Virus record (IMG/VR): IMGVR_UViG_3300043446_005562
Location: 124,001 to 188,000 of that record
DNA length: 64,000 bases
Direction: 5' to 3' (one strand)
Shown here: one piece after another, positions 35,538 through 47,993 of the stretch
How positions within the stretch are numbered: position 1 is the first letter of the stretch
How the letters are laid out: each line of letters opens with the position of its first letter
Program-made: the position numbers and the translations under genes
The notes under the pieces: model-generated
Seen by the model: the letters and a program-made list of their open reading frames with translations, nothing else
Told to the model about the DNA's origin: nothing
Databases searched by the model: none

Positions 35538-37250
35538 TTAATATGCAGTTGAAGGAGCTACAGAACCTGTCAATACTCCTAGTCCTGTTACAGACATTGT
35601 GATGTATTGAGTTTCTGGGTGCCATCCTGCTTCTGTAATAGCATAACGAGATTTCATACCTAATTTTGGAGAGAAAGTACCCTCTGCGATAGTTTGAAGA
35701 CTCTCAGCCATGATATATGGAAGGAATTTAACACCTGGTTCTTCATCAGCACCTTTACGACCGATGTGGATACGGTTATCAGTGAACTTCAAGTTAGGAT
35801 CAACGTATACAGTTAGACCGTGTACTTTACCAGCTGGGTAAAGTTGGCCAGGACCTGAAGGAAGATCGTTATTGAATGGAGCGAAAGAATAACCAGCAAC
35901 ATCAGCAAGAGCTGAAGCTACACGACCGTTAGTAACGATGTATGTACCAGCACCGAAACGACCTCTGTGATAAATCAAGTTAGCCATTTCAAGGATTTTA
36001 GTAACAACACGACGTTGTAGAGTTGAGATGTTTTCGAAACCAGAACCTACAGTAAGATCTAAAGTAGTGATTCCTGAACCTTCAACTGAGTTAACGCTAG
36101 TTGCGTGAGTAGCACCTAAGTTCAATACTCTGTCAACTAATTTTTTGTTGATACCTTGTGCAAGTTCGTTAACCGCAACGTTTTCCAACATAGAGATTAC
36201 GTCGAAATTCCAAACACGGTTAAGATCTTGGATTTGCTCAACAGTTGCAGAGATTGCTACTTGGTCACCTTTTGCTTCGATGAACTTAGTGAACATACGA
36301 AGACCCATTTGACGGAATTTAGAAACTTCAGCAACTTCACGTTTCATACCGTCGAAGTTAACTTGCGAACCGTTTGAACCTAAGAAAGGACCATCGAATG
36401 CAGTTGAAGCATAGTCAGAATCGCTTACTGAAGTGAAACCTGAAATGTGATTTTCTAGAGCAGATACTAAAGTAGCTGTCATACCGTTAGCACCACCGAA
36501 ACCTTTCCAAGGTTCAGCTGAAGTACCAGCAGCAGAGTTACCTGTATCGGTACGTGAACCTGTGTAAGTAACGTTATCAAGAGCAGCAACTGCGTCAGCT
36601 ACAGTAGTAGTAGATGAATCAGTAGTACCACCTTGGATTACTTTTAGGATAGGTAAACCGTCGATACGAGATTTTCCAACGTATTGGAATTTGAAAGCAG
36701 CGCCAGTGTTACCAGTATCACCTTGGATATAGTCACCAATTGTAATACCTGCATTAAGAGCAGAAGACAATTTAACCATATAAGGTTCGTACTGAGTATC
36801 TAAGTTACCACCTTGGTATACGTAGTCCAAGTAAGGTAAGAAACCTACTGGAGAATCCATAGGAACTACACCAACTAGGTCGAAACCGATAGTTTTAGCA
36901 GCTACTTGGATAGCTACTGGAAGAAGGCTTGGGAATTTATCACCAGAACCAGATACAGAAGCACCGTAACCATTTTTTACACCAGCTGTGAATGGTGTCA
37001 TTGAGCTAGTTGGAGCAGAGATTGCACCAATTGAGCTGATAGAACCAGGTTGTTGTAAGAACAAACCAGGAGCTGAACCTGAAGCCAAAGCTTCGTTCAA
37101 TGAGCCTGCGTTATCGAAGATAGCGTGGTTGTGAGCGTAGTCAACTAACCAAGGGCGAGCTTTGATGTCTGCACCGTAACCTTCTAATACTGGAGCCCAA
37201 GTTTCAGTAACTGAAGCGTCATTCAGTCTTTTGAAAATTTTTGTTGCCAT
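35538..37250 (-). CDS. gp23: Major capsid protein (gp23-like)
   Basis: TWAPVLEG, IGFDLVGVVPM, TVEQIQDL, ELAQGINK, GRFGAGTYIV, FLPYI, TFSPKLGMKSRYA; SLNEA probable maturation site; strongly biased codons; TATAAATAA late box at 37389-37397. Confidence 0.93.
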   Translation of the reverse strand: MATKIFKRLNDASVTETWAPVLEGYGADIKARPWLVDYAHNHAIFDNAGSLNEALASGSAPGLFLQQPGSISSIGAISAPTSSMTPFTAGVKNGYGASVSGSGDKFPSLLPVAIQVAAKTIGFDLVGVVPMDSPVGFLPYLDYVYQGGNLDTQYEPYMVKLSSALNAGITIGDYIQGDTGNTGAAFKFQYVGKSRIDGLPILKVIQGGTTDSSTTTVADAVAALDNVTYTGSRTDTGNSAAGTSAEPWKGFGGANGMTATLVSALENHISGFTSVSDSDYASTAFDGPFLGSNGSQVNFDGMKREVAEVSKFRQMGLRMFTKFIEAKGDQVAISATVEQIQDLNRVWNFDVISMLENVAVNELAQGINKKLVDRVLNLGATHATSVNSVEGSGITTLDLTVGSGFENISTLQRRVVTKILEMANLIYHRGRFGAGTYIVTNGRVASALADVAGYSFAPFNNDLPSGPGQLYPAGKVHGLTVYVDPNLKFTDNRIHIGRKGADEEPGVKFLPYIMAESLQTIAEGTFSPKLGMKSRYAITEAGWHPETQYITMSVTGLGVLTGSVAPSTAY

Positions 37251-37267
37251 TTTATTAAAATGTTTTT

Positions 37268-38545
37268 TTAATTTTGTGCTCTTCTTTTGAGAGCGTCTAA
37301 ATAGTTACTTGAGTAACCTCTTAGACTTTCGTGTACTTGTGTTAACGAAACATAGCCCTCTTTACCTTGGCTTTCGTTAATTGTTTGATTATTTATATTG
37401 TTTGCTTGCGCAATTCTTTCGCTGATTGCTCTAAGATCACGTGAATCCCAGAAAGCTTTTGCTTGGTAAGGAGTGTTGATCACTTGAGTAGAGGCCTGTG
37501 CCGCAATCCAGTTACGCTCATTATCTGTCATACCTTCAAACACTGATTTGTATTTTTCTGGCATGAAACGAACGTAGGCTGGGGTGTTTTCTACCTGTTT
37601 GTTCAATACTGCTTCCATGATATTGATAACTTCACCTTCAGTAAAGAAGATAGCGCCTTTCATCGTTTCAACGATTGCAGATTTAGTTTCAGTATCTAAA
37701 GCATAGAATTTTTGTTTATTAGATTCGCTAAGAAGTTTTAGGAATGGATACTTGTTCTCAAGAACAGCATTTGCTGAATTTGATTTAATGTGAGCAAGAA
37801 TTCCGTCAACTGCATTAGTTAATTCATCAACACCAGAGGCATCATTAACTTCGTAGCTTGCATTTTCATTAAGTTTCTTAACGTCAGCTAATAGTCTACG
37901 AGCTTTGATGTTGGTATTTGGAGTGATCTTTTCGTTCATTGTTTCAGCAATGTACTCAGAATAGGCAATACCTTTTTGTAAGTTTTCGCCTAAATACTCA
38001 GAATATTTAATAGCTGCATCAAGATTTTCAGCTAAGTAATTTGCAAATTTGATACCCTTTTCAGCATTTTCTGCAACGTATTCAGCGTATTGAATACCCT
38101 TGTCAACGTTTTGAGCTAGATAGTTTGAATAGGCAATATTCTTTTCAACGTTTTCAGCAATGTATTCGCCGTAATTGATGGATTGATTTACCTTTTCGCC
38201 TAAGTAGTCAGAGTATTGAATATTCTTCTCAATTTTTTCTGCTAAGTAATCGCCGTAATCGATCACGTTGTTTACCTTTTCAGCAACGTGTTCAGTATAA
38301 CCAATACCCTTATTCAACATGGTTGAAAGGTAATTAGAATACTCCACCATTTTTTCCATTTCACCAGCTAGGTAATTTACATACTCAACTAGTTTTCCAG
38401 TTTCTGGTGATTCGTTACTATTTTCGTTAAGAGCACGTAGACCAGCGTTATTTTTCGAAAGGTTTTCTTGAAGAGCGTCGAATTTCTTCTTTACCAATTG
38501 CGAATACTGGTTCATTTCTTCTCTTGATACAAAGTCATTAGCCAT
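37268..38545 (-). CDS. Nested in-frame scaffold/core protein (425 aa, starts MANDFVSREE)
   Basis: Internal late box AATAAATAA at 38583-38591 and an A-rich leader (AAACAACAAAATAACAATAAGCAA) precede the in-frame ATG (codon 236). Confidence 0.6.
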   Translation of the reverse strand: MANDFVSREEMNQYSQLVKKKFDALQENLSKNNAGLRALNENSNESPETGKLVEYVNYLAGEMEKMVEYSNYLSTMLNKGIGYTEHVAEKVNNVIDYGDYLAEKIEKNIQYSDYLGEKVNQSINYGEYIAENVEKNIAYSNYLAQNVDKGIQYAEYVAENAEKGIKFANYLAENLDAAIKYSEYLGENLQKGIAYSEYIAETMNEKITPNTNIKARRLLADVKKLNENASYEVNDASGVDELTNAVDGILAHIKSNSANAVLENKYPFLKLLSESNKQKFYALDTETKSAIVETMKGAIFFTEGEVINIMEAVLNKQVENTPAYVRFMPEKYKSVFEGMTDNERNWIAAQASTQVINTPYQAKAFWDSRDLRAISERIAQANNINNQTINESQGKEGYVSLTQVHESLRGYSSNYLDALKRRAQN

Positions 38546-39250
38546 TTGCTTATTGTTATTTTGTTGTTTAGGAATTTCAGAATTATTTATTCTATAGATC
38601 TTCACAGAATCTTCAAAAGAGAAGCTTTCTGATATATCTGTTAATTTATTTGTGATTGAAGCAGTCTTTAAAGTATCCAAAGACTCAAACAGAACTGAGA
38701 AATTGTCCTTAAGGCTTTCAGATACCTGAGTTAGGGATGCTTGCGAGAAACCAGGTTCAGCAACAATATCGTAGGTAAAGATTTTTTGAATCTTAACAAC
38801 ACCGCTCTCATTTACATTACCTGCAGCTCTTGATGAGGTTGAGATAGTACAGCCTGACTCAACTAGGGTCTTTGCAATACGACCGCATGGAGTATCAAGT
38901 ACTCTTAATTTGATACGAACAGTATTTGAAGGCTCGTCATAGTTAAGAGATTCAACCACGTGAGATACGTTCTTTAAGGAAACGTCAAAGCTTTGTGGAT
39001 GATCAAGCTCTCCAAATAACTGACCCTTTTTGATTTTTTCGTTTAGATAGGAAAGATGAGGCAAGTACTCTTGCTTCTCATAGATACGATTGTTTTCGTT
39101 CTTTTGTCCAAAGACTGCGCAAATACCTTCAAGGATAATTGAACCGTCATTTGATTTTGAAACATTTAATGCTTCATTAACTCGTTCAATGATGAATAAT
39201 TGACTTTCATCAAAGCCGGTCTTTAGTAAGTTTGTTTTAGCGCTAGTCAA
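37268..39250 (-). CDS. gp21: Prohead protease (gp21-like) fused to core/scaffold domain
   Basis: LEGICA, NENNRIY, GELDHP, NVSH, LDTPCG, STSSRAAG, TYDIVAEPGF; long helical repeat C-terminus; TTG start; late boxes at 39269-39277 and 39316-39324. Confidence 0.88.
   Translation of the reverse strand: MTSAKTNLLKTGFDESQLFIIERVNEALNVSKSNDGSIILEGICAVFGQKNENNRIYEKQEYLPHLSYLNEKIKKGQLFGELDHPQSFDVSLKNVSHVVESLNYDEPSNTVRIKLRVLDTPCGRIAKTLVESGCTISTSSRAAGNVNESGVVKIQKIFTYDIVAEPGFSQASLTQVSESLKDNFSVLFESLDTLKTASITNKLTDISESFSFEDSVKIYRINNSEIPKQQNNNKQMANDFVSREEMNQYSQLVKKKFDALQENLSKNNAGLRALNENSNESPETGKLVEYVNYLAGEMEKMVEYSNYLSTMLNKGIGYTEHVAEKVNNVIDYGDYLAEKIEKNIQYSDYLGEKVNQSINYGEYIAENVEKNIAYSNYLAQNVDKGIQYAEYVAENAEKGIKFANYLAENLDAAIKYSEYLGENLQKGIAYSEYIAETMNEKITPNTNIKARRLLADVKKLNENASYEVNDASGVDELTNAVDGILAHIKSNSANAVLENKYPFLKLLSESNKQKFYALDTETKSAIVETMKGAIFFTEGEVINIMEAVLNKQVENTPAYVRFMPEKYKSVFEGMTDNERNWIAAQASTQVINTPYQAKAFWDSRDLRAISERIAQANNINNQTINESQGKEGYVSLTQVHESLRGYSSNYLDALKRRAQN
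37934..38395 (-). repeat. Eleven tandem 14-aa repeats in the scaffold domain (K.I.Y..Y[LIV]AE...)
   Basis: KLVEYVNYLAGEME / KMVEYSNYLSTMLN / ... / KGIAYSEYIAETMN; 42-bp periodicity. Confidence 0.85.
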
Positions 39251-39315
39251 CTTTGTAAGACTTTTTTATTATTTATATAGCGATCTATCTGCTAAAATAG
39301 ATGGCTATACTAACA

Positions 39316-40194
39316 TTATTTATCAAAGTCTTTTAGCAATTCTCTAAGAGTTGAGAGGTTTTGTTCTGATTGATTGGTGAGATCAGGTTTATTTACCTTG
39401 ACTTCAAAAATAAAAGCTCCACGATGGCCAAGCGGTGAGACTAGACCCTGGTCGGGAATGCGCACTCTAATATCTGATAGATTAGTAACATTAAGCGATT
39501 TTATGCGATATTTTTTACCCAGAGGATTCTCCAGGATGATTTCTTCAGCAAAAAGAACATCATGTAGGCTTAAATTAACAGTCTGTATAAGATCAATTTC
39601 CCTGATTTCAAGACCGACTTTGTCAATTATTACCCTAATTATTAGGTCTCCAACCGCACTTGCCTGTCGAGCCCGGCCAAAAAAGTCAGATCTTTCAAAT
39701 ATTTGACTTGAGCCAGCTCCCCTAATCCTGAGCGTAATTACTTCGTTTGAGCCAACTTGGGTAATCGGATAGGCTGTCTTACTTAGGTCAAGCCGAATAC
39801 GATAAGTTTTATTCTCAAAGCTCGACCGGTCCAATCCAATCTTGGATATTTGATAGTCCACAACAAATTCAACGCCAGCCATTAGTTCAGTAAGAGAGAA
39901 CTTTCTATCCCTAATCACATGCAAATGGGTAGGAGTCTCAAAACTACCAAATGAAAAGTCATGAAAAGAGGTAAAATGGTCCTGAAACTGAGGGCCCATT
40001 TGTGCACGATCGTATTCAGCGCGCTTGGCCGGATCACTAAGCGTGTTATAGGCATCCGCTATCTGTTTGAAGAGTTCCTCGCCATCCGGATTTTTATCAG
40101 GGTGGTATATCTTAGTTAATTTTCGATATGCCTTTTTTATCTCGTCAGGAGTTGCCTCTTGCGAAATCTCAAGAATTTCATAATAATTTTTCAA
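39316..40194 (-). CDS. dnaJ: DnaJ-family co-chaperone
   Basis: [23 protein letters not shown]-domain; C-terminal GDLIIRV and GAFIFEV; no zinc finger. Confidence 0.9.
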
Positions 40195-40224
40195 AATAGA
40201 TAGATCTAAACCGGTCTTTCTAGT

Positions 40225-40251
40225 ATAATACTACGATATCGGCTCGAGTTT
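40225..40251 (-). promoter_or_regulatory. Early/middle promoter AAAC-N17-TATTAT for dnaJ
   Basis: Same motif and spacing on the - strand; overlaps a + strand TATAAT (40224-40229) facing the glycosylation island. Confidence 0.6.
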
Positions 40252-40281
40252 ATAAAGAACCGTTATAAAAAATCCAATTAG

Positions 40282-42648
40282 GTGGCAGCAATCATTTTTA
40301 CCTACTATTCAGAAACAGTATCTCATTCATTTTTAACTAACATTGAGTCCTTTCTAGCAAATGGCGAAAAATACGACTCTTTGGTAATTTGTTCGGATTT
40401 AGAAATTCCCAGAAAAATCGTAAATAAGTTAACTGAGGTAATTAAGGTTCAGCGAATATTGCCAGCTCAAATGACAAAGGACGTTAGAAAACGGTCAAAT
40501 CGAGCAGTCTCTTGGCACGTAAATCCATCAATCCTGACAGCTTTTTCATATTCATTAGCTGATTCAATAACGGTCTTTGACCCAAATCTATTCATCATAA
40601 AGCCAATTGACTTTGCAAAAACCGATAGCGTTTTCTTTAAATCTCATGCTGGATTTGTTTCTCCAAATCTTTTCAAGTTTAAATACAGCCCTGCTCTAGA
40701 AAAGGCAGTTAGTCAGCTTTTGGCAAAAATAGATTTTCAATCAGCTTCGAGCGATTTGATGTTTAGTCAATTTGTCACTCAATGCACATTCTTCGGCACA
40801 AAAACCTTTTCATCAAGCTCTTTTATTTTTTCAAAACCAGAAAGGGGCCACAAGCTACTGGAGTCAAAATTATTTGCAATAGATTTTTCAAATATCGCAG
40901 AAGTCTCAAGATTCAAAGAGCTATTGGCAATAAAGGAACTTCATACATCAAAGCGAAAAACCAATTTTTTGACAAGAATTCGAAAGTCCCTTCATGAATT
41001 CATTGATTCAGTCAATCTAACTCCAAATCAATTATTGACGACCGTGCCGGTCCTTGCCTCAAATTATGAGAAATACAAGGACGCAAAGATTAAAAATTTT
41101 CCAATAACAATAATCCATACCAAGCAGGTCGCAAATCACGCAAAGAGACTTGAAGAAATACTAAAGTCTTATGGTTTTGACATAACTAATCGATTAATGA
41201 ATCCAAATTCGCCAATTGGAAAAGAGTCAAAGGATTTACACATAATCATGTGCCCAAACGTATTCTATGACTTTCCTCAAAATTATATAGCGTATCAATT
41301 TGAACAGGCTCATTCTAAATGGTTTACTCCCGATTACATCAACAAATTAAACAATTCAATTGAGATTTGGGAATACTCAGAATACAATATTCAATATTTT
41401 AACGGGTCATTCAAAAAGCCGCATGTGTATGTGCCGATTGGGGATTTAGGAGTCGGCGAACAGGACCTCTCTCAAACTCGTGATATTGATATTCTGTTCT
41501 ATGGAGAATTCATGAACAGCCCACGTAGAAAGCAGTTCTTAGAAGAGATCAAAAAATATAAAGACATAAAGATTGTTGACGGTTTTTCAAGTAATAATAC
41601 GTTCGGTAGTTCAATAACAGATCTTCTTAAAAGAACCAAAGTAGTATTGAATCATCACTTCTATGAGAACGGTCAGCTTGAAGTAGTTAGGCTGTATGAA
41701 GCTCTAAGTTATGGCTGTAAAGTTGTATCTGAAGTATCGATAGATGACAATTTCCATAATTTACCGATTTTAAAATATTCAAATATAGATCAGGCAATAA
41801 TTTCATTAGATCAAGCACTTGACGGTGAAGCTCCCGAAAAATTTGTTAGAGACTCAGCGGTTCACATAAAAAATGCTCTTGGTAGATTGGGTTTTAATTT
41901 TACAAAATCAACAATAACCGTCGATAATCTTAGCACAGTACTAACCTCTCCCAGAAAAAAAAGAGTTGCCGTTTATTTACACCTTTATTACACGGATTTA
42001 TGGCAAGAGCTTGATTCGTATTTACAAAATATTCCGGAAGAGTTTGATCTATATGTAAATTTTGTTGAGGATACTTATGACCAAAAAATAGCGTATCAAA
42101 TAATTGATCAGTACCCTCACGCTAAAATTTTCAAATCTAAAAATGCAGGTAGGGATTTTGGCGGATTCTATACGATGCTACGCTATTCAACTTCAGGTCA
42201 GAGCGATGTTTCTATTTTAATTCACAGCAAAAAAAGTAAAACCAGCAACGTTAAGAATGGAGATCAGTGGCGAAGGGATCTGCTTGAACCAATACTTGGT
42301 TCTAGAGAAATTGCTGCAAACACGCTTGCTAAAATCCGTCTTGAAAACGCTGGAGTAGTTTCAGCAAAGCGGTGGAGAAAAACAGATCCATCGCAAATAG
42401 GTTCAAATGCCAATAATCTATCAGTACTAAGCGCTAGACTCGGTTATGACTATTCAAAATATGCACTGGACTTTACAGCAGGTTCAATTATTGCCGTGAA
42501 TACAATACTGCTAGAAGACATTTTCAAATCATTGAATTATTCCGATTTTATTGAAGGGGATTACATTGATGGTACAATGGCTCATGCACTAGAGAGATTC
42601 ATTCCAAATTACGCAGTTCACAAAAAATATAAATTAGAGTATGTCTAA
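40282..42648 (+). CDS. Multidomain glycosyltransferase (degenerate GT-A-like + GT-B-like + RgpF rhamnan-synthesis-like)
   Basis: RDIDILFYG...KVVLNHHFYE...VVRLYEALSYGCKVVSE; VYLHLYYTDLW, NAGRDFGGF, IHSKKS, GDQWRRDL, DGTMAHALER (RgpF-like). Confidence 0.78.
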   Translation: MAAIIFTYYSETVSHSFLTNIESFLANGEKYDSLVICSDLEIPRKIVNKLTEVIKVQRILPAQMTKDVRKRSNRAVSWHVNPSILTAFSYSLADSITVFDPNLFIIKPIDFAKTDSVFFKSHAGFVSPNLFKFKYSPALEKAVSQLLAKIDFQSASSDLMFSQFVTQCTFFGTKTFSSSSFIFSKPERGHKLLESKLFAIDFSNIAEVSRFKELLAIKELHTSKRKTNFLTRIRKSLHEFIDSVNLTPNQLLTTVPVLASNYEKYKDAKIKNFPITIIHTKQVANHAKRLEEILKSYGFDITNRLMNPNSPIGKESKDLHIIMCPNVFYDFPQNYIAYQFEQAHSKWFTPDYINKLNNSIEIWEYSEYNIQYFNGSFKKPHVYVPIGDLGVGEQDLSQTRDIDILFYGEFMNSPRRKQFLEEIKKYKDIKIVDGFSSNNTFGSSITDLLKRTKVVLNHHFYENGQLEVVRLYEALSYGCKVVSEVSIDDNFHNLPILKYSNIDQAIISLDQALDGEAPEKFVRDSAVHIKNALGRLGFNFTKSTITVDNLSTVLTSPRKKRVAVYLHLYYTDLWQELDSYLQNIPEEFDLYVNFVEDTYDQKIAYQIIDQYPHAKIFKSKNAGRDFGGFYTMLRYSTSGQSDVSILIHSKKSKTSNVKNGDQWRRDLLEPILGSREIAANTLAKIRLENAGVVSAKRWRKTDPSQIGSNANNLSVLSARLGYDYSKYALDFTAGSIIAVNTILLEDIFKSLNYSDFIEGDYIDGTMAHALERFIPNYAVHKKYKLEYV

Positions 42649-43726
42649 ACCCAAAGTACTGGCTTTTTATTTACCGCAGTTTTATCCAATTCCAGAGAAT
42701 GATGCCAATTGGGGCGTCGGTTTTACAGAATGGACAAATTTGACCAGAGCAAAGCCTAGATTTGAAAATCACGTGATTCGAAAAGAGTCTCTTGAATTTG
42801 GTCAATACGATCTTCGCAGTTATCAAGTCAGAAAAAGACATGCAGACTTAGCAAAGGATCATGGAGTTTACGGTTTCGTCTATTATCACTATTGGTTTTA
42901 TGGAAATTCTCCAGAAAAAGTGATGTACGAACCGCTAGAGAGAATGCTGATTGACGGCGAACCTGATTTACCATTTTGTTTTGAATGGGCCAATGAGCCA
43001 TGGACAAAAACCTGGGATGGATCCGAAAAAAATGTACTACTTCCGCAAACGTACGGCACACCAGCCGAATGGAAAAAGCATTTTGAGTATTTGCTTCCAT
43101 TCTTCAAGCACAAAAATTACATATTGGTCGACAATAAACCAGTATTTATGATATACAGAATAGGTCATTTCAAACAGTTTAATCAATTTAAAAATTTTGT
43201 AAATGAGCTTGCCATCAAAGAGGGTTTTTCAGGAATCCACTTTGTTCAACTGTTAAATCATTTTAGCGATTCTGAGGATTTGTTTGACCTAAGCGTCGAT
43301 GCCTATGCAGAATATCATCCAATGTACGTGAACCGGTTCATTAATCCTATTGTTATGGATAGCGAACAATTTACCCTACATGATGCTGTGCAAAAATGGC
43401 AAAAAATACCGGAAATACCGTTGCCAACTCATTTGCTCAGGGATAAACACTACTATCGAGGTTATTACAGCGGCTGGGACGCATCCCCTCGAGGTTTAAA
43501 TCGAAAATTTTCAATTGATGTAAATAATACACCGGATAATTTTAAAAAGAATTTGGGCAAACAGCTAGACCTAGTCGTGAATGACAAATTTAATCCGGAA
43601 AATTTTCTTTTTATTTTTGCCTGGAATGAATGGGGCGAGGGCGCAATACTTGAACCAGACACAGTGTTTAAATACGAATATTTGAATGCAATAAGAGATA
43701 GCGTTAAAAAATATACCAGTACATGA
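42641..43726 (+). CDS. WbsX-like glycosyltransferase / GH99-like domain protein
   Basis: LAFYLPQFYPIPEND, GFTEWTN, YYHYWF, WANEPW, GWDASPR, AWNEWGEGAILEPD. Confidence 0.88.
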   Translation: MSKPKVLAFYLPQFYPIPENDANWGVGFTEWTNLTRAKPRFENHVIRKESLEFGQYDLRSYQVRKRHADLAKDHGVYGFVYYHYWFYGNSPEKVMYEPLERMLIDGEPDLPFCFEWANEPWTKTWDGSEKNVLLPQTYGTPAEWKKHFEYLLPFFKHKNYILVDNKPVFMIYRIGHFKQFNQFKNFVNELAIKEGFSGIHFVQLLNHFSDSEDLFDLSVDAYAEYHPMYVNRFINPIVMDSEQFTLHDAVQKWQKIPEIPLPTHLLRDKHYYRGYYSGWDASPRGLNRKFSIDVNNTPDNFKKNLGKQLDLVVNDKFNPENFLFIFAWNEWGEGAILEPDTVFKYEYLNAIRDSVKKYTST

Positions 43727-44514
43727 AAGTTGGAATAGTTGCTATCGCTAAAGACGAGGAAAGATATTTAGCTGAATGGTTGCAGTATCATTCGCTGCTT
43801 GGCTTTGATAATTTTTACATATACGATAATTCCTCAAATAATCGATTAATGAATTTTGCAACAGATAAAATCAAAATAATTTATTATCCTGGGCGAGTTA
43901 AGCAGATTGAGGCGTACAACGATTTTATTCAAAACTTTTCAAATGAAATAGACTATGTTATTGCGCTAGATATCGATGAATTTCTAGTAATTCACAATGG
44001 TTTAACTTTGCAAAATTTCATAAAAAAGTATGTACTTTCTTCTGGTGTATGTATTAATTGGAGATTTTTTGGCGCAAATGGCCATAAATACTTTAAGGAC
44101 CAGTCGGTGTTAGAAAGATTCACAATGAGGCAACCTGATTTTGATCACAATGTAAAAACTCTGGTCAAAACTGAGACCCTATTGAGATATTCAAATCCAC
44201 ACTGCCCGGATCTGATAACAGTCGGTCAAATTACAGATCTGTTGGGTAATCCAATAAATCTTAATGATCCAGTCTCCGAGGTAGATACCATTGGAATTGC
44301 TCAAATAAATCACTATTTCTGTAAATCTTGGCAGGAATTCAACTGGAAAATAAATAGAGGTAGAGCAACAACTATGAAAGAAAAGAGATCAACCGACGAT
44401 TTTGTTTGGTCAAATAGAAACGATGTACTTGACCTCAGTGCAATTAAATTTAGAGATAAAAAAAATAATCATATAAACAATGTACTTACCGATTCCTTAC
44501 AAAATTCAGTATGA
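43723..44514 (+). CDS. Glycosyltransferase family 2/92-like
   Basis: AIAKDEERYLAEWLQYH, GFDNFYIYDN, LDIDEF (DxD), INHYFCKS. Confidence 0.82.
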   Translation: MKVGIVAIAKDEERYLAEWLQYHSLLGFDNFYIYDNSSNNRLMNFATDKIKIIYYPGRVKQIEAYNDFIQNFSNEIDYVIALDIDEFLVIHNGLTLQNFIKKYVLSSGVCINWRFFGANGHKYFKDQSVLERFTMRQPDFDHNVKTLVKTETLLRYSNPHCPDLITVGQITDLLGNPINLNDPVSEVDTIGIAQINHYFCKSWQEFNWKINRGRATTMKEKRSTDDFVWSNRNDVLDLSAIKFRDKKNNHINNVLTDSLQNSV

Positions 44515-45118
44515 CACCAAAAAATTCAATTTCAAGGAGATTGTTGAAAATATGTTGGGTGTGACCGATCTTTATCAGTTACATCAACTTAAAGATTATG
44601 AATTCTTTTCAAGAGAAAAGGATCAGTCAACCGAATGGCATAAATCGTATTATTCAAAATTTGAAACCGAGTTTTATCCAACCTATCTTGAGTTGATTAA
44701 ATTTCTGGCAAAACAATTTGATTATAACGAACTCATATATCAAAAAATTCCAACCTTTAGAACTCAACTGGTCAATAATCTAGGAGTTGGTGAATGGCAC
44801 CGGGACAGAACCTACAACCACGGAATAACTGAGGTCAATTTTTGGATGCCGTTTACTGATACTAACGAAACCAATACCATTTGGATGGAGAGCCGAGAAG
44901 GCAATGAGGACTTTATGCCCTATACTGTAAAATACGGAGAAATCCTAGTCTTTGATGGCGCTAACCTACTACACGGTAATAAAACAAACATGTCAGACAC
45001 AACCAGGGTCTCGGTTGACTTTAGGCTAGTTGATCCAGAGCTCTTTATTCCAAATCAGGCTGGCTCAATTAACATGAATGCACCATTCGATCTAGGTGGT
45101 TACTTTGAAAAAATTTAG
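44480..45118 (+). CDS. Fe(II)/2-oxoglutarate dioxygenase-like protein (StrG/PhyH-like)
   Basis: QKIPTFR, WHRD (HxD), NFWMPFTD, LLHGN, TRVSVDFR. Confidence 0.72.
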   Translation: MYLPIPYKIQYDTKKFNFKEIVENMLGVTDLYQLHQLKDYEFFSREKDQSTEWHKSYYSKFETEFYPTYLELIKFLAKQFDYNELIYQKIPTFRTQLVNNLGVGEWHRDRTYNHGITEVNFWMPFTDTNETNTIWMESREGNEDFMPYTVKYGEILVFDGANLLHGNKTNMSDTTRVSVDFRLVDPELFIPNQAGSINMNAPFDLGGYFEKI

Positions 45119-45121
45119 TAA

Positions 45122-45949
45122 ATGAAATTAGCCGCAGGTTATGTTGTATTCGATGGCCTTGAGACTCTTGGCGCGTCCCTGAAGTCAATCAGAAATCAGG
45201 TTAATATAATCATTGTCTCATATCAAACTGTTTCCTGGGGAGGAACCAGTGCGAAACCTGGGCTTGTGCAAGAGCTCAATGAGTTAAAGGCACAAGGCCT
45301 AATTGATCACATAATTGAGTTTAAAAATTTTAGACCCAGCACATTAAAAACGCCAGAATCGGTCATTCAGGCCAAGGCGTTTGAGCTCAATAAAAGACAG
45401 GGCTGTCTAAACCTGGCTAGGGAATTGGGGGCAACTCATTATCTATCAATTGATGCTGATGAGTGCTATCGAGAAAAAGAATTTGCTTGGGCCAAATCCG
45501 AAATTGAAAAAAATTCGCTGGACGCAACCGCTCTGCACTACATTAATTACGTTACTCCAACTCTACATCGGGGTTATTCGCGTTGGAAAATTCCTTTTAT
45601 TTACAGAATCACGCCGAGCTGTCGACACCATAATCTGCAGCAGATATTTTCAGGAGTAGATCCAACTCGTGGCCTGCTTGACGAAGATTATCGAAAGAGC
45701 CGAGTTTTTGAAAGAGAGCTAATCTCAATGCATCACATGGAAATGGTTCGCCATGACATTGGTGAAAAGTATCGGGCATCAAGCCGCTACTTTCCGAATC
45801 GCGAAAAAATTCCAATGCTGGAACAGGACATTGTGACCGCTCAACAGACCGGCGCTCTTAAATTTACAGGACCCCATTTGGGAGATGATGACCCAAAGAA
45901 GAGCACCCAATTGATCAAGTGTGATAACGAATTTGGAATAGATTTTTAA
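45122..45949 (+). CDS. GT-A fold glycosyltransferase-like protein
   Basis: ELNKRQGCL, HYLSIDADE (DxD), MHHMEMVR. Confidence 0.65.
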   Translation: MKLAAGYVVFDGLETLGASLKSIRNQVNIIIVSYQTVSWGGTSAKPGLVQELNELKAQGLIDHIIEFKNFRPSTLKTPESVIQAKAFELNKRQGCLNLARELGATHYLSIDADECYREKEFAWAKSEIEKNSLDATALHYINYVTPTLHRGYSRWKIPFIYRITPSCRHHNLQQIFSGVDPTRGLLDEDYRKSRVFERELISMHHMEMVRHDIGEKYRASSRYFPNREKIPMLEQDIVTAQQTGALKFTGPHLGDDDPKKSTQLIKCDNEFGIDF

Positions 45950-46746
45950 TTGCCCTTGGCAATTATGACATCGGTACTAAGTGCATTACCCATACCTATT
46001 TGTACAGCGTTTGTTGCTGCACCCGCTCCGCCTGGAGCCTTTGAATCAATTATTGCTGCAAGCTGAGTTAATAGAGCCTTTAACGGCTCGCCAAGTACAG
46101 CTGAGTGCTTTGTACCGTCCTTGCCTACCTGTACTCGGCCGCCCAAGAGCTTAATCATTGGGCTGTCAACCGTCACAGCCGACCCGGTTGTAACATTGAC
46201 TTGGGAATTTGCATTGATTCGAATAATATTGTTCTCGAAAGAGATTTGAGACTGGTGATCCTTATGCTCAATTAAGATATTTGAGGTTTTATTGTCAATT
46301 CGAATGAACGATTTCTTTAGCTCCATTTGTAGACCAATCTCACGATCAAACCAAAATCTAATCTGCTCATCGCCGTCAAACAGGATAAAATGAGCCCCTT
46401 CGTATTTTGCACCGCCCTTTTTAAGTTCTTCCTTGATATCCTCGCCGACCTCCTGGGGTTGCATGTACTCGGGTGAATAGATATCGCCATGATTGAACTT
46501 TACTTGCACAACCGCACCGACCTTGGGTATTGATAATGAACCGCCTCTAGCGTGCTTACCAAAGAACATTGGCTTGTTGGCAGGTACCGCCCATGGTAAA
46601 TCTTCTACTGCAATATCATCAAACAGCGAAAAAACTCGAATTCGACAGCGACCCTCAAATTTCGGGTCCATAATGTCTTCCACCTTTCCAAGGTATACAT
46701 CTGAAAATTCTTCAGACTCAGCGTTTGTTTTAATTGAAGTTGCCAT
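45946..46746 (-). CDS. Baseplate central spike, gp5/VgrG-like OB-fold (no lysozyme domain)
   Basis: GKVEDIMDPKFEGRCRIRV, LPWA, IPKVGAVVQVKF, followed by beta-strand repeats. Confidence 0.8.
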   Translation of the reverse strand: MATSIKTNAESEEFSDVYLGKVEDIMDPKFEGRCRIRVFSLFDDIAVEDLPWAVPANKPMFFGKHARGGSLSIPKVGAVVQVKFNHGDIYSPEYMQPQEVGEDIKEELKKGGAKYEGAHFILFDGDEQIRFWFDREIGLQMELKKSFIRIDNKTSNILIEHKDHQSQISFENNIIRINANSQVNVTTGSAVTVDSPMIKLLGGRVQVGKDGTKHSAVLGEPLKALLTQLAAIIDSKAPGGAGAATNAVQIGMGNALSTDVIIAKGN

Positions 46747-46778
46747 ACTCTATTTTATACTCTAGATTTATTGATTGG

Positions 46779-47993
46779 TTATGGATAAACATCACCAAGG
46801 TTACCCAACACAATTGGAGTTTCTTCAGGATTGGGCAGCGCTCGCGTGCCGGTTAGATCAGCGATCGGCGGGCCGACTGGCGCCTGTCTACCTGTGATTG
46901 ATGCTCCAAACTTATTGATTGCTCCGCTTATTCCATTCAGGCCGCCTTCCTCATACACATTACCTAACGCGGTGCCCTCTATGCCAGTCTGTATGTCATT
47001 CAGCACAGAACCTGCGATTGCGCCAGGCAGTCTAGTGATAGAACTTAGCACATTACTCAATCGATTGCTCAGTGCATTAAAAGCGCCCGTTAATAAACCC
47101 GACTTGTGTACATCATTTGCCTCTGACGCGGGTACCGCAACCTGTTCAACCCAACCAACATTTACCTTGAAGCTAGGCGAAAATGGCTTGTCCTCAGTAG
47201 AGGCTTTAAATTCAGTCTGGCCGGTTCCACCCAAGAATTCAGCAAAATCAAATTCGCACTGTTTGAGTCTAAATCTAATTGTTTTTAGACCCCTTACTAG
47301 ATTTTTACTGGAATCGTATTGATAAAAATCATTTTCGGTATCGCTGAACAGCCCCTTTGTGCCGTGATCAACGATATCCCGAATCTCAATCAACCAAATT
47401 TCCATGTCAAACCAGCGCAAGTTATCCGGCAGACGATACGCTAATCTGTCGTTATCGTATACCGCATACCTGTAATTTTCAGCAATATCGGTTAGAGGTT
47501 GTCTAATTGATTCCAGACAGTTAAAGGTCAGAGTTGCCTTTTTGTTTCCTTCTTTTACACGATGAGTGGTTTTCCATAAATCGGAGATTCCTTGCACTGA
47601 CTGAAAATACCATGGCGAAGACTGCAGATCAAGCAGGCCGGTAATGCAGTTTGCAAGGCACAGGCTTGGCGTAAGATTTGAACCAATCGTGGCTGGGACC
47701 GTGTAGCCCCCGTAATAGTCTGTGAGCCATTGGTATGCAGAGTACTCAACCAGTCTGTTGGTTGGGCCGTTATCGGGCTCCTCTATGAATCTATCGGCTG
47801 AGATATTTGACTCTGTGCCAAACAGCGCAGCTGGCCCCATTAATAAATTATCATTGTAAATACCGTCGTTTTGAAAGGTTGTTCTGACTGGAAAAAAGTC
47901 AAGATGAAAAGTCAAAAAGACCGGATCGTTAAAATCCGCAACTGACGATTTTATAAAACTATCTACTTTGGTTGGTTGGCCGAATCTTCTCAT
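46779..47993 (-). CDS. Probable baseplate/tail-tube-associated structural protein
   Basis: Position within the baseplate operon; beta-rich pattern suggestive of a tube-like fold. Confidence 0.45.
   Translation of the reverse strand: MRRFGQPTKVDSFIKSSVADFNDPVFLTFHLDFFPVRTTFQNDGIYNDNLLMGPAALFGTESNISADRFIEEPDNGPTNRLVEYSAYQWLTDYYGGYTVPATIGSNLTPSLCLANCITGLLDLQSSPWYFQSVQGISDLWKTTHRVKEGNKKATLTFNCLESIRQPLTDIAENYRYAVYDNDRLAYRLPDNLRWFDMEIWLIEIRDIVDHGTKGLFSDTENDFYQYDSSKNLVRGLKTIRFRLKQCEFDFAEFLGGTGQTEFKASTEDKPFSPSFKVNVGWVEQVAVPASEANDVHKSGLLTGAFNALSNRLSNVLSSITRLPGAIAGSVLNDIQTGIEGTALGNVYEEGGLNGISGAINKFGASITGRQAPVGPPIADLTGTRALPNPEETPIVLGNLGDVYP

What the first reader, a model, noticed from the sequence alone, without database searches (positions are those of the whole stretch)
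40282..45949. Five-gene glycosylation island inserted antisense between the head and baseplate modules
Seen in sequence: overlapping or abutting genes for a tri-domain GT/RgpF fusion, a WbsX/GH99-like protein, a GT2/92-like protein, an Fe/2OG dioxygenase-like protein and a GT-A protein. None has an obvious signal peptide. The first three look more AT-rich than the flanks. Established: RgpF and WbsX families act in rhamnan and O-antigen synthesis, not in T4-type DNA glucosylation. Inference: a cytoplasmic glycan-building pathway for virion glycosylation, host surface remodelling, or hypermodification of the predicted modified cytosine, with the dioxygenase tailoring a sugar or base.
Basis: partly seen in the sequence, partly recalled or inferred. 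Interest (0 to 1): 0.6.

Follow-up and report, generated by a model that had tools for sequence, protein, structure and literature searches.

The report
Variable glycan-building island in jumbo phage
A large uncultured freshwater phage carries five soluble sugar-transfer and sugar-tailoring genes between its head and baseplate genes, at a site where its relatives keep different sugar genes, so it probably builds a strain-specific glycan, most likely on the virus particle, though the target is not shown.

Summary
Five overlapping or abutting + strand genes (40282-45949) lie between - strand head genes (MCP, prohead protease, DnaJ homolog) and the baseplate hub gene.

- G1 has a GT8-like GT-A domain, a weak GT-B-half-like middle and an RgpF-C GT-A domain.
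- G2 is a full-length WbsX.
- G3 is GT2/GT92-like.
- G4 is a 2OG-Fe(II) oxygenase of a carbohydrate-cluster type.
- G5 is a phage-only GT-A with an invariant DxD.

All five are soluble. G1-G4 are among the most AT-rich 1% of the 252.6-kb genome.

The DnaJ|baseplate-hub site carries an opposite-strand cluster in 33 of 42 distinct relatives. In the 14 surveyed it holds changing glycan genes: GT2, GT8, GT10, RgpF, methyl-, acetyl-, pyruvyl- and sulfotransferases, aminotransferases and CMP-sugar synthetases. One nested clade lost the island. Another relative keeps only a G5 remnant.

The predicted dCMP hydroxymethylase, a basic GT2 and a GalE-like epimerase persist in island-less relatives. The island is therefore probably not the DNA-glycosylation set.

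My best explanation (about 0.4) is cytoplasmic glycosylation of virion proteins. The capsid protein's hypervariable loop is Ser/Thr-rich only in island-bearing close relatives. Host-glycan remodelling and DNA hypermodification remain open. I rate it a new variant of a known kind.

The parts
40221..40233 (.). Palindromic TAGTATAATACTA element in the 87-nt divergent intergenic region. Read on + it gives a perfect TATAAT 53 nt before the G1 start. Read on - it gives TAGTATTAT 31 nt before the DnaJ start.
   Evidence: Sequence. TAGTAT[AT]AT occurs 18 times in the genome, 11 of them within 60 nt upstream of a same-strand gene. The element is conserved upstream of DnaJ in island-bearing and island-less relatives. 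Promoter function is inferred. The generic sigma-70 scan showed no enrichment.
40282..40971 (+). G1 domain 1 (aa 1-230): GT8-like GT-A glycosyltransferase domain. D100 is invariant, but the motif reads D-P-N rather than DxD.
   Evidence: AF2 model, pLDDT about 85 in this part. Foldseek: glycogenin 3e-6, LARGE1 and GlyE. VIA: GlyE Z 14.4, glycogenin 14.2, LgtC 13.3, WbbM GT8 domain 12.1. The domain is shared by the first island gene of relatives L011, L016, L018, L023 and L032, more weakly by L050; L048's first gene was not matched.
40999..41916 (+). G1 domain 2 (aa 240-545): strongly conserved middle domain, possibly a single GT-B-type Rossmann half (Glyco_trans_1_2 / CgeB-like).
   Evidence: Weak only. 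PF13524 E 0.12. 17 of 30 Atlas feature hits carry PF13524. Many invariant columns in A3. The model is poor here (pLDDT 30-65).
41950..42648 (+). G1 domain 3 (aa 557-788, plus stop): C-terminal half of the RgpF family, with a GT2-like GT-A fold.
   Evidence: PF05045 85.8 bits, profile positions 258-502 of 503. VIA: ArnC 12.2, WrtF 12.2, hyaluronan synthases 11.8-11.9. Homologous stand-alone or fused domains lie next to WbsX in other viral contigs L002-L009.
42641..43726 (+). G2: WbsX-family protein, full length.
   Evidence: PF14307 E 1.5e-99, profile 1-350 of 350. It is 57-59% identical to proteins in 8 other viral contigs. Bacterial relatives found reach only 34-35% (Pedobacter, Parabacteroides, SR1, Peribacteria).
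43723..44514 (+). G3: GT-A glycosyltransferase of the GT2_4/GT92 type, with a D-I-D motif.
   Evidence: PF13704 3.5e-14 and PF01697 6.7e-12. phrog_13126 'beta-1,4-glycosyltransferase' 1.3e-7. Sequence.
44480..45118 (+). G4: 2OG-Fe(II) oxygenase with H107-x-D109 ... H165, of a type found in carbohydrate gene clusters.
   Evidence: PhyH 27.7 bits (cut-off 22). TIGR04324 E 1.2e-13 but below its cut-off. Sequence. It is 78% identical in L018 and 63% in L002, where it again follows WbsX.
45122..45949 (+). G5: phage-lineage-specific GT-A glycosyltransferase with invariant D111-A-D113-E114. It is the last gene wherever the island's end is mapped, and the most widely kept.
   Evidence: 97 relatives, none with a Pfam domain or a name. 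Alignment A1. pLDDT 93. PDB: SunS 6e-8, TarS, TarP, SpsA, COLGALT1. BFVD: 'Fringe-like' Myoviridae protein 9e-21. Present in 10 of 16 related records. A remnant is left in L033.
39316..40194 (-). Left border: DnaJ homolog (J domain plus DnaJ_C), transcribed divergently from the island.
   Evidence: PF00226 2.4e-24 and PF01556 5.7e-5.
45946..46746 (-). Right border: baseplate hub / OB-fold (gp5/VgrG-like) gene, convergent with G5.
   Evidence: phrog_430 and phrog_37871. PF04717 E 1e-4. It abuts DnaJ directly in the island-less relatives.
36471..36773 (-). Candidate acceptor (inferred): the hypervariable Ser/Thr-rich loop of the major capsid protein (aa about 160-260).
   Evidence: This stretch is the least conserved part of the MCP alignment. 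It does not align to T4 gp23 residues 133-246. Its S+T fraction is 0.21-0.31 in 14 island-bearing close relatives and 0.13-0.18 in the 6 island-less ones.

Best explanation
**Shown**
- The five genes form one tightly packed operon of soluble cytoplasmic enzymes.
- It holds five predicted glycosyltransferase modules and a possible sixth. G1 supplies two GT-A domains (GT8-like, RgpF-C) plus a weakly GT-B-half-like middle domain. G2 is the WbsX module, G3 the GT2/GT92-like one and G5 a GT-A.
- It also holds one 2OG-Fe(II) oxygenase of a carbohydrate-cluster type (G4).
- The operon occupies an old, hypervariable glycan-synthesis locus of an uncultured freshwater jumbo-phage lineage. The locus lies between the DnaJ/protease/MCP genes and the baseplate hub gene.
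- In close relatives the first gene keeps a GT8-like domain, and G5 is the last gene in those whose locus end is mapped. The genes in between are exchanged.

**Inferred mechanism**
- The enzymes use host nucleotide sugars. No nucleotidyltransferase is encoded.
- A second AT-rich phage sugar cluster lies at genome 228.8-234.5 kb. It holds a NeuD/PglB/VioB-type acetyltransferase, an FkbM methyltransferase and an aminotransferase-like gene, and it probably helps to tailor the sugars.
- The conserved GT-A enzymes prime a conserved phage acceptor. The variable enzymes then extend and decorate an oligo- or polysaccharide.
- The acceptor I think most likely is a virion protein, above all the Ser/Thr-rich hypervariable surface loop of the major capsid protein.
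- The result would be a strain-specific glycan coat on the particle, as in mycobacteriophages, chloroviruses and mimiviruses.
For: **Enzymology.** The catalytic motifs are intact: G5 D-A-D-E is invariant in 44 sequences, G3 has D-I-D, and G4 has HxD...H. None of the proteins has a TM segment.

**Old variable locus.**
- Of 42 distinct MCP relatives, 33 have at least 1.5 kb at this site. Where ORFs were listed (14 loci) they all lie on the opposite strand.
- Pfam censuses of 37 ORFs (7 close loci) and 54 ORFs (7 distant loci) found almost only glycan enzymes.
- The six island-less phages form one nested clade (support 100/99), so the island was lost there.
- L033 keeps a 54-aa remnant of the G5 C-terminus next to the hub gene.

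**Conserved ends, variable middle.** G5's family is known only from unnamed metagenome proteins on phage-sized contigs. The WbsX gene is far closer to other viral copies (57-59%) than to the bacterial copies found (34-35%). This argues for a conserved phage acceptor, not a host glycan.

**Position.** The locus sits inside the morphogenesis module.

**Capsid loop.** Its S+T fraction is 0.21-0.31 (n=14) with the island and 0.13-0.18 (n=6) without it. The rest of the MCP is 0.14-0.17 in all. In L033, where the island has decayed, the same loop is cut from about 100 to 63 residues.

**Nearest solved folds.** For the two conserved GT-A modules these include protein- or peptide-directed enzymes: SunS, GlyE, glycogenin, the Skp1 galactosyltransferase and UGGT.

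**Link to the second sugar cluster.** In viral contig L002 one array runs RgpF-C, WbsX, a G4 homolog and a G3-like gene. It continues with homologs of genome genes 233915-234544 (82%) and 232348-233325.

**A separate candidate DNA-glycosylation set exists.** The hydroxymethylase homolog, a GT2 with R..DAD..EDW and pI 9.6, and a GalE-like epimerase survive in island-less relatives.

**Occurrence.** Near-identical DNA is present in at least 14 runs from 7 studies. Contig pieces at least 99% identical (one piece of a more divergent variant aside) lie over all five genes in four riverine metatranscriptome libraries.
Against: - There is no direct evidence for any acceptor.
- The capsid-loop correlation rests on essentially one loss event, plus one anecdotal deletion. 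It is not seen in the distant clade: L070 lost most of the island and keeps S+T at 0.22.
- The island lacks the ATAAATAA motif that precedes most structural operons. It sits behind a TATAAT-type element instead, so it may not be expressed with the late genes.
- GT-A folds do not predict the acceptor. TarP and TarS, which also match G5, are the top PDB hits of known phage DNA glycosyltransferases.
- RNA libraries can contain DNA, and Logan contigs show neither strand nor level.
- The G1 N-domain lacks a canonical DxD. The G1 middle domain is poorly modelled.
Confidence: 0.4

Rival explanations
1. Host envelope remodelling. The soluble glycosyltransferases work at the cytoplasmic face of the membrane on the host's own undecaprenyl-linked O-antigen, capsule or cell-wall polysaccharide intermediates. 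The altered glycan is exported by host machinery. That changes the infected cell's surface, for example to block superinfection or to keep progeny from re-adsorbing.
For: - RgpF, WbsX, GT2, GT10, FkbM, pyruvyl transferase and WbqC are families typical of O-antigen, rhamnan and capsule loci.
- Bacterial WbsX homologs sit in polysaccharide clusters.
- G1's architecture matches bifunctional glycan polymerases such as WbbM, LARGE1 and chondroitin synthases.
- The promoter-like element is of the TATAAT type, not the late type.
- Large cyanomyoviruses carry similar unexplained 'cell-wall' gene sets (PMC12801897).
Against: - The hydropathy scan flagged only two proteins with three or more hydrophobic segments: a 235-aa protein with three and the 1492-aa giant. 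Neither looks like a 10-12-helix flippase, polymerase or permease, so no priming phosphoglycosyl transferase, flippase, polymerase or ABC permease is evident.
- The conserved anchor enzymes are phage-specific and old, not recent host acquisitions.
- This explanation gives no reason for the fixed position inside the virion module across a deep phage lineage.
Confidence: 0.2
2. DNA hypermodification. The phage replaces cytosine with 5-hydroxymethylcytosine. The island's glycosyltransferases then build a mono- to oligosaccharide on it, and variable content gives strain-specific protection from restriction.
For: - A divergent ThyA homolog lies 9 kb away (30572-31453). It matches CMP and dCMP hydroxymethylases (2e-20, 2.5e-15) better than thymidylate synthases (5e-11). 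It has Asp at the E. coli N177 position.
- The genome also has a canonical ThyA.
- Phage DNA is known to carry up to tri-saccharides made by several phage glycosyltransferases with phage sugar-nucleotide enzymes (PMC13326640; bioRxiv 10.1101/2023.12.21.572611).
- Known GT-A DNA transferases also hit TarP in the PDB, as G5 does.
- The proteins are soluble and sit behind a non-late promoter-like element.
Against: - The hydroxymethylase and the dCMP deaminase are kept at 67-71% identity in every island-less close relative.
- Those relatives also keep a basic GT2 with the R..D(A)D..ED(W) pattern and a GalE-like epimerase. That is the 'GT plus epimerase' layout already shown to glycosylate 5hmC.
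- The island is not clustered with the base-modification genes, whereas known pathways usually are.
- Five predicted transferase modules (a possible sixth), plus methyl-, acetyl-, pyruvyl- and sulfotransferases and CMP-sugar synthetases at this site in relatives, exceed any DNA glycan described.
- None of the top-listed fold matches was T4 alpha- or beta-glucosyltransferase.
Confidence: 0.15
3. Another acceptor, or none. The cluster might make a soluble or lipid-linked glycoconjugate used during infection. Or it might be largely dispensable cargo that persists at a recombination hot spot without a virion-, DNA- or envelope-directed role.
For: - The island is dispensable in one clade and decayed in L033.
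- Its composition departs from the genome.
- The MCP and its neighbours show discordant identities that suggest frequent recombination here.
Against: - Reading frames and catalytic motifs are intact across many divergent relatives.
- The locus has been kept over a deep lineage (MCP identity down to 61%).
- The genes are tightly packed and overlapping.
- The island DNA is near-identical across many environments.
Confidence: 0.1

Closest known systems
Mycobacteriophage virion glycosylation (Freeman et al. 2023, cited in PMC12619734 as ref. 45; details from my own knowledge, the paper is not held)
   Same: Phage-encoded cytoplasmic glycosyltransferases, in some phages with methyltransferases, decorate capsid and tail-tube subunits. 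The gene sets differ between related phages.
   Different: - Those are small siphoviruses and myoviruses of Actinobacteria with 1-4 GT genes, and the glycans sit at protein C-termini.
- Here the phage is a 252-kb myovirus-like jumbo phage with five predicted GT modules (a possible sixth) and a second sugar cluster.
- The families are unrelated to those (RgpF-C, WbsX, GT8-like, and a new GT-A family).
- The acceptor is unproven.
Chlorovirus (PBCV-1) and mimivirus virion glycosylation machinery (own knowledge: A064R and A111/114R multi-domain transferases; viosamine/bacillosamine/rhamnose clusters)
   Same: - Virus-encoded, cytoplasmic and independent of ER or periplasm.
- Uses multi-domain glycosyltransferase fusions that include rhamnosyl-type and GT-A domains.
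- Includes sugar methyl- and acetyltransferases and aminotransferases.
- The gene sets vary by strain.
   Different: Those are eukaryotic giant viruses. No sequence relationship was tested here beyond generic GT-A fold hits in BFVD.
Phage DNA glycosylation pathways (T-even glucosylation; RB69/DLP3 arabinosyl-5hoC, PMC13326640; 5mYOX/ThyS-linked GT-A and GT-B clusters, bioRxiv 10.1101/2023.12.21.572611)
   Same: Soluble phage glycosyltransferases, sometimes several in a row and sometimes with an epimerase. The sets vary among relatives. This phage does encode a hydroxymethylase-like ThyA homolog.
   Different: - Known pathways cluster with the base-modifying enzyme and a nucleotide kinase.
- They add at most about three sugars.
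- Here the island is separate, it is far richer in tailoring enzymes across relatives, and it is dispensable while the hydroxymethylase is not.
Bacterial rhamnan / O-antigen loci (RgpF of streptococcal rhamnose polysaccharide; WbsX of E. coli O-antigen clusters; bifunctional polymerases such as WbbM)
   Same: The Pfam families are shared. G1's fusion of a GT8-like and a GT2-like GT-A domain resembles the polymerising transferases of ABC-transporter-dependent pathways.
   Different: - Only the C-terminal half of RgpF is present.
- No priming transferase, export, polymerase, ligase or dTDP-rhamnose genes are present.
- Sequence identity to the bacterial WbsX copies found is only 34-35%.
'Moraphages' (PMC12619734): freshwater jumbo phages of 200-307 kb, distantly related to Lak phages, with DnaJ/DnaK homologs, four glycosyltransferase orthogroups in the core genome and unexamined variable islands
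   Same: Habitat, genome size, a T4/Lak-like MCP (31-36% to Lak and huge phages), a DnaJ homolog and several glycosyltransferases.
   Different: - Membership could not be tested because no sequences or names are shared with my tools. No DnaK was found.
- The paper does not describe this locus. It only says the variable islands deserve study.

Membership tests
RgpF (PF05045, rhamnan synthesis protein F) | Match to the whole 503-position family profile | tested here: not met
   Only profile positions 258-502 match (aa 546-782), at 85.8 bits against a cut-off of 25. G1 therefore contains an RgpF C-terminal domain. It is not an RgpF orthologue.
RgpF (PF05045, rhamnan synthesis protein F) | Rhamnosyl transfer from dTDP-L-rhamnose to a lipid-linked rhamnan | not testable with these tools
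   The fold is GT2-like GT-A. Donor and acceptor are unknown. No Rml-type nucleotidyltransferase is in the genome.
WbsX (PF14307) | Full-length match above the curated cut-off | tested here: met
   334 bits against a cut-off of 25.1, profile 1-350 of 350.
   No solved homolog by sequence. Both structure-prediction jobs went to G5 and G1.
GT-A glycosyltransferases (GT2-like), for G5 | Rossmann-like GT-A fold with a conserved DxD metal/nucleotide-sugar motif | tested here: met
   pLDDT 93. SunS, TarS, TarP and SpsA at 6e-8 to 5e-6. D111 and D113 are invariant in 44 sequences.
GT8 (retaining GT-A), for the G1 N-domain | GT8 fold | tested here: met
   GlyE Z 14.4, glycogenin Z 14.2, LgtC Z 13.3. 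Foldseek 3e-6.
GT8 (retaining GT-A), for the G1 N-domain | Canonical DxD and a Pfam PF01501 match | tested here: not met
   No Pfam hit even at E 10. The motif is D100-P-N102 with only D100 invariant. Distant relatives do carry true PF01501 domains at this locus.
2OG-Fe(II) oxygenases | PhyH/DSBH domain and the HxD...H iron triad | tested here: met
   PhyH 27.7 bits against a cut-off of 22. H107-R-D109 and H165 are in the sequence.
TIGR04324 sporadic carbohydrate cluster 2OG-Fe(II) oxygenase | Score above the curated cut-off (150 bits) | tested here: not met
   51.2 bits, E 1.2e-13. G4 is related to this family, not a member.
T4-type DNA glucosyltransferases / known phage DNA glycosylation clusters | Similarity to alpha- or beta-GT, or clustering with the base-modifying enzyme, and co-inheritance with it | tested here: not met
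   No alpha- or beta-GT among the top-listed fold matches. The island is 9 kb from the hydroxymethylase, on the far side of the head genes. It is absent from relatives that keep the hydroxymethylase.
Complete O-antigen / cell-wall polysaccharide locus | Priming phosphoglycosyl transferase plus flippase/polymerase or ABC transporter | tested here: not met
   The hydropathy scan of all 249 ORFs flagged only a 235-aa protein with three segments and the 1492-aa giant. None of the island proteins has a TM segment. This was a scan, not a family search.
Genomic island / moron | Presence/absence polymorphism at a fixed site, deviant composition, own orientation and promoter | tested here: met
   Empty sites with only 59-98 nt between the hub gene and DnaJ. 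GC 0.356, in the lowest 1% of windows. Opposite strand with its own TATAAT element. The tree nevertheless favours old presence with later loss.
Virion glycosylation systems (functional class) | Glycan demonstrated on a virion protein and dependent on the phage transferases | not testable with these tools
   Indirect support only: position, conserved ends, the capsid-loop Ser/Thr pattern.

The most novel reading that the evidence does not exclude
A widespread lineage of freshwater jumbo phages keeps an 'O-antigen-like' hypervariable locus inside its morphogenesis module. The locus would build strain-specific complex glycans, with rhamnose-type and amino sugars and methyl, acetyl, pyruvyl or sulfate decorations, on the Ser/Thr-rich hypervariable loop of the T4-like capsid protein. 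If so, a giant-virus-style, virus-encoded, cytoplasmic capsid glycosylation system would exist in tailed phages outside the Actinobacteria, separate from and alongside a conventional 5hmC DNA-glycosylation set.
Probability: 0.3. Interest if true: 0.75.

Novelty: new variant of a known kind. Interest (0 to 1): 0.55.

Why it matters
Phage-encoded glycosyltransferases are usually filed under DNA glucosylation or lysogenic serotype conversion. Virion glycosylation has been shown in only a few phages.

This locus is a defined and comparable test case:
- It sits at a fixed site in the virion module.
- Its end genes are conserved in close relatives and its middle is interchangeable.
- Natural 'knock-outs' exist in the island-less clade.
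- A candidate acceptor loop in the capsid protein varies with it.

It also answers a question left open in the description of the moraphage lineage, namely what its variable islands encode. If capsid glycosylation is confirmed, it would bear on phage stability, adsorption, grazing or decoy avoidance in lakes, and on how capsid surfaces diversify. If the target is instead DNA or the host envelope, the locus would be the most elaborate example of either.

Tried and rejected
**Searches that found nothing or little**
- Megablast of the island against 50,697 phage records: no match.
- PHROGs: a hit for G3 only.
- NCBIfam: G4 only.
- PDB sequence searches for G1, G5, G4, G2 and G3: nothing useful.
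- Pfam at E 10 on G1 pieces: only a weak PF13524 lead for the middle domain and nothing for the N-domain.
- Generic sigma-70 and terminator scan of 39200-47000: 21 promoter-like sites against 24.7 expected and one weak terminator-like site, so no support.
- Genome scan for bacterial WbsX relatives: only four distant loci. This is pattern-limited and not a census.

**Ideas rejected or weakened**
- The MptE-like (Maf-type) hits in the distant clade are short and below the cut-off. I do not use them as evidence for protein glycosylation.
- 'Recent insertion' is rejected in favour of old presence with loss.
- 'AT-richness proves foreign origin' is rejected. GC3 and codon-usage distance are unremarkable, and the protease gene is equally AT-rich.

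**Steps not run or not possible**
- Freeman et al. 2023 is not held.
- No DnaK was found, so that moraphage trait could not be used.
- The large representative-protein search was not used. No claim here rests on absence of relatives.
- Only table 11 was used.
- Read laying was given 5,901 letters.

Full report
**What is there**

The window is bases 124001-188000 of a 252,618-bp IMG/VR virus record, estimated 93% complete, with GC 41%. Five + strand ORFs lie at the stated coordinates: G1 40282-42648, G2 42641-43726, G3 43723-44514, G4 44480-45118 and G5 45122-45949. They overlap by 8, 4 and 35 nt, then leave a 3-nt gap.

Everything around them is on the - strand:
- On one side are the T4-like major capsid protein (35538-37250), a prohead protease (37268-39250) and a DnaJ homolog (39316-40194).
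- On the other side are a baseplate hub / OB-fold gene (45946-46746, overlapping the G5 stop) and further baseplate and tail genes.

The MCP is only 31-36% identical to the nearest deposited phages, which are uncultured huge phages and the Lak megaphages. The island has no nucleotide match among 50,697 phage records.

**The five proteins**

G1 (788 aa) has three parts.
- Residues 1-230 fold as a GT8-like GT-A domain: GlyE Z 14.4, glycogenin Z 14.2, LgtC Z 13.3, and the GT8 domain of the polymerase WbbM Z 12.1 (Foldseek 3e-6 for glycogenin). This domain has no Pfam match, and its motif reads D100-P-N instead of DxD.
- Residues 240-545 are the most conserved stretch in 14 full-length relatives, yet they are poorly modelled. 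The only leads are a Pfam hit to Glyco_trans_1_2 at E 0.12 and 17 of 30 Atlas feature neighbours carrying that family.
- Residues 546-782 match only the C-terminal half of the RgpF profile (85.8 bits) and fold as a GT2-like GT-A domain (ArnC and WrtF Z 12.2).

G2 is a full-length WbsX protein (334 bits). G3 matches Glyco_tranf_2_4 and GT92 and has a D-I-D motif.

G4 is a 2OG-Fe(II) oxygenase with an HxD...H triad (PhyH 27.7 bits). Its best named relative is TIGR04324, the 'sporadic carbohydrate cluster' oxygenase (E 1e-13, below that family's cut-off). It did not match a TET/JBP-type base oxygenase.

G5 has no family hit. It has 97 unnamed relatives, all from metagenomes and many on contigs of 50-290 kb. 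D111-A-D113-E114 is invariant among them. It folds at pLDDT 93 as GT-A:
- In the PDB it matches the SunS peptide S-glycosyltransferase (6e-8), TarS, TarP, SpsA and COLGALT1.
- In BFVD its best match is a 'Fringe-like' Myoviridae protein (9e-21).

None of the five has a hydrophobic segment.

G1-G4 have GC 0.33-0.375. Only 1% of equal-sized genome windows are as AT-rich. G5 (0.43) is ordinary. GC3 and codon-usage distance are not extreme.

**Comparison with relatives**

The MCP recovered 80 related viral loci. A tblastn matrix of island and flank proteins and ORF maps show that the gap between DnaJ and the hub gene is a variable site.
- Of 42 distinct MCP relatives, 33 have at least 1.5 kb of extra DNA there. 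In the 14 loci where I listed ORFs, the genes all lie on the opposite strand.
- In close relatives the first gene usually shares G1's GT8-like N-domain. This was seen in L011, L016, L018, L023 and L032, and weakly in L050.
- G5 is the last gene in all five relatives whose locus end lies within the fetched DNA (L018, L023, L032, L048, L050). It lies just beyond the fetched end in two more, the records holding L011 and L016.
- The genes in between differ from phage to phage.

A Pfam census of 37 such ORFs from seven close relatives found:
- GT2 (6)
- DUF5672 (2)
- FkbM methyltransferases (2)
- GT10 fucosyltransferase domains (2)
- hexapeptide acetyltransferases (2)
- single examples of RgpF, Glyco_trans_1_2, Rhamno_transf, GT92, PhyH, GT1, GT-D-like and DUF6395

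In a deeper clade (MCP 61-65% identical) 54 ORFs at the same site gave:
- GT2 (8)
- CMP-sugar-type cytidylyltransferases (5)
- SAM methyltransferases
- hexapeptide acetyltransferases (3)
- DegT aminotransferases (2)
- GT8 (2)
- polysaccharide pyruvyl transferases (2)
- Rhamno_transf (2)
- WbqC, RgpF, a GFO/IDH/MocA oxidoreductase, a PIG-L deacetylase, FkbM and a sulfotransferase

So this is an old, hypervariable glycan-synthesis locus. Its logic resembles that of an O-antigen locus.

On an MCP tree the six phages with an empty site (59-98 nt between the hub gene and DnaJ) form a single clade with 100/99 support. That clade is nested among island-bearers. In L033 the locus has shrunk to 739 bp and still holds a 54-aa remnant of the G5 C-terminus. 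Loss, not recent insertion, explains the polymorphism.

**Links elsewhere in the genome (outside the window)**
- A second AT-rich cluster lies at genome 228824-234544. It encodes a NeuD/PglB/VioB-type sugar N-acetyltransferase (173 bits, above its cut-off), an FkbM methyltransferase, a short PseC/LegC-like aminotransferase homolog and four unassigned proteins.
- It is tied to the island by viral contig L002. There one array runs RgpF-C, WbsX, a G4 homolog (63%) and a G3-like gene. It is followed by homologs of genome genes 233915-234544 (82%) and 232348-233325.
- The genome also has a GalE-like epimerase/dehydratase directly after the T4-like portal gene, and a GT2 next to a helicase.
- No sugar nucleotidyltransferase was found.
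- The hydropathy scan flagged only two proteins with three or more hydrophobic segments. Neither resembles a flippase, polymerase, priming transferase or ABC permease.

**Which target?**

The ThyA homolog at 30572-31453 matches CMP hydroxymethylase MilA (2e-20) and T4 dCMP hydroxymethylase (2.5e-15) better than thymidylate synthases (5e-11). It has Asp where E. coli ThyA has N177, and it keeps D169 (residue logic from PMC13326640). A canonical ThyA also exists.

Three findings speak against the island as the DNA-glycosylation set:
- This gene and the adjacent dCMP deaminase are kept at 67-87% identity in every close relative, including all island-less ones.
- Among the island-less records, the GT2 (pI 9.6, pattern R..DAD..EDW) is kept in one (the record holding L031). 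The GalE-like enzyme is kept in two, those holding L031 and L039.
- A GT-A plus epimerase pair is exactly a layout shown to glycosylate 5hmC (bioRxiv 10.1101/2023.12.21.572611).

Known DNA pathways also cluster with the base-modifying enzyme and add at most about three sugars. I therefore think any DNA glycosylation is done by that conserved core, and the island has another target.

*Host envelope.* The families fit, and G1 resembles polymerising transferases. Three points weigh against it:
- No priming or export function is encoded.
- The conserved anchor enzymes are phage-specific.
- The WbsX gene is far closer to other viral copies (57-59%) than to the bacterial ones found (34-35%).

These points argue for a conserved phage acceptor, not ever-changing host glycans. 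The fixed position inside the virion module is also left unexplained.

*Virion proteins.* This reading fits the position, the conserved-ends and variable-middle layout, and the number of modules. It also fits one new observation about the capsid protein.
- The MCP is highly conserved except for a loop at about aa 160-260. That loop does not align to T4 gp23 residues 133-246, roughly where I recall gp23 carrying its surface insertion domain.
- In 14 island-bearing close relatives the loop has S+T at 0.21-0.31. In the six island-less ones it has 0.13-0.18. The rest of the protein is 0.14-0.17 in all.
- In L033, with its decayed island, the loop is cut to 63 residues.

This is suggestive only. 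It is essentially one loss event plus one anecdote, and the distant clade shows no clear pattern.

**Expression**

A motif ATAAATAA, like the T4 late promoter TATAAATA, occurs 68 times in the genome. Fifty copies lie within 60 nt upstream of a same-strand gene start, mostly 19-25 nt away. They include the protease/MCP and baseplate operons.

The island has none. Instead a palindrome TAGTATAATACTA (40221-40233) gives a perfect TATAAT 53 nt before G1. Read on the other strand, it is an element conserved upstream of DnaJ in all close relatives. The island may therefore be expressed in a different temporal class from the late genes. This is inference, and the generic promoter scan was uninformative.

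Near-identical island DNA occurs in at least 14 DNA runs from seven studies of freshwater, reservoir, estuary and wastewater samples. Contig pieces lie over all five genes in four riverine metatranscriptome libraries. All but one piece, which belongs to a more divergent variant, are at least 99% identical. This is compatible with transcription but does not prove it.

**Comparison with the literature**

A 2025 paper describes 'moraphages': freshwater jumbo phages of 200-307 kb, related to Lak phages, with predicted Bacteroidota hosts and DnaJ/DnaK homologs. It lists four glycosyltransferase orthogroups in the core genome and states that the variable islands remain to be examined (PMC12619734).

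This phage fits that description in habitat, size, MCP affinity and DnaJ. It has no DnaK, and membership could not be tested. Large cyanomyoviruses also carry many unexplained glycosyltransferases (PMC12801897). Virion glycosylation is established for mycobacteriophages and, from my own knowledge, for chloroviruses and mimiviruses.

**Verdict**
- The thing is a real, functional-looking glycan-assembly operon at an old hypervariable locus.
- Its target is unproven. I put virion-protein glycosylation at about 0.4, host-glycan remodelling at about 0.2, DNA hypermodification at about 0.15 and another or no acceptor at about 0.1; the remainder is unassigned.
- I rate it a new variant of a known kind, with moderate to good interest (0.55).

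Noticed in passing
window 20860-22251 (+), and genome 192630-194087 (outside the window, = window coordinate 68630-70087): The family-B DNA polymerase appears split into two genes 46 kb apart. The first carries the exonuclease domain and PolB profile positions 16-145. The second carries PolB positions 144-450.
   Followed up: no
whole genome; in the window e.g. 39269 (protease), 52159, 52681, 54457, 55661: The motif ATAAATAA (like the T4 late promoter TATAAATA) occurs 68 times. Fifty copies lie within 60 nt upstream of a same-strand gene start, mostly 19-25 nt away. It is absent from the island.
   Followed up: partly
window 30572-31453 (+) and 31450-31908 (+): A divergent ThyA homolog is closer to CMP/dCMP hydroxymethylases than to thymidylate synthases. 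It has Asp at the N177-equivalent position and overlaps a dCMP deaminase gene. A canonical ThyA lies at genome 28190-29389. This suggests 5hmC DNA.
   Followed up: partly
window 36471-36773 (-), MCP aa about 160-260: The capsid protein has a hypervariable loop. It is Ser/Thr-rich in island-bearing close relatives (0.21-0.31), not in the island-less clade (0.13-0.18), and truncated in L033.
   Followed up: partly
window 35538-39250 compared with L023 and L011: MCP identity is discordant with its neighbours. In L023 the protease is 94% and a nearby ORF 96% identical but the MCP only 76%. In L011 the MCP is 90% but the protease 70%. This points to recombination within the head module.
   Followed up: no
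genome 228824-234544 (-), outside the window: A second AT-rich sugar cluster holds a NeuD/PglB/VioB-type acetyltransferase, an FkbM methyltransferase, a short aminotransferase-like gene and four unassigned proteins. In viral contig L002 its homologs are contiguous with island homologs.
   Followed up: partly
genome 198091-199002 (+) and 215026-215739 (-), outside the window: A GalE-like epimerase/dehydratase follows the portal gene directly, and a basic GT2 (pI 9.6) lies next to a helicase. Both are kept in island-less relatives, which makes them candidates for a DNA-glycosylation pair.
   Followed up: partly
window 39316-40194 (-): A phage DnaJ homolog (J domain plus DnaJ_C) lies next to the prohead protease, with a conserved palindromic promoter-like element upstream. 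No DnaK is in the genome.
   Followed up: partly
genome 195207-195713 (+), outside the window: A protein with a TnsA-like endonuclease N-terminal domain lies two genes upstream of the portal gene.
   Followed up: no
L033:6358-6522 (-): A 54-aa ORF is a remnant of the G5 C-terminus, in a relative whose island has shrunk to 739 bp.
   Followed up: yes
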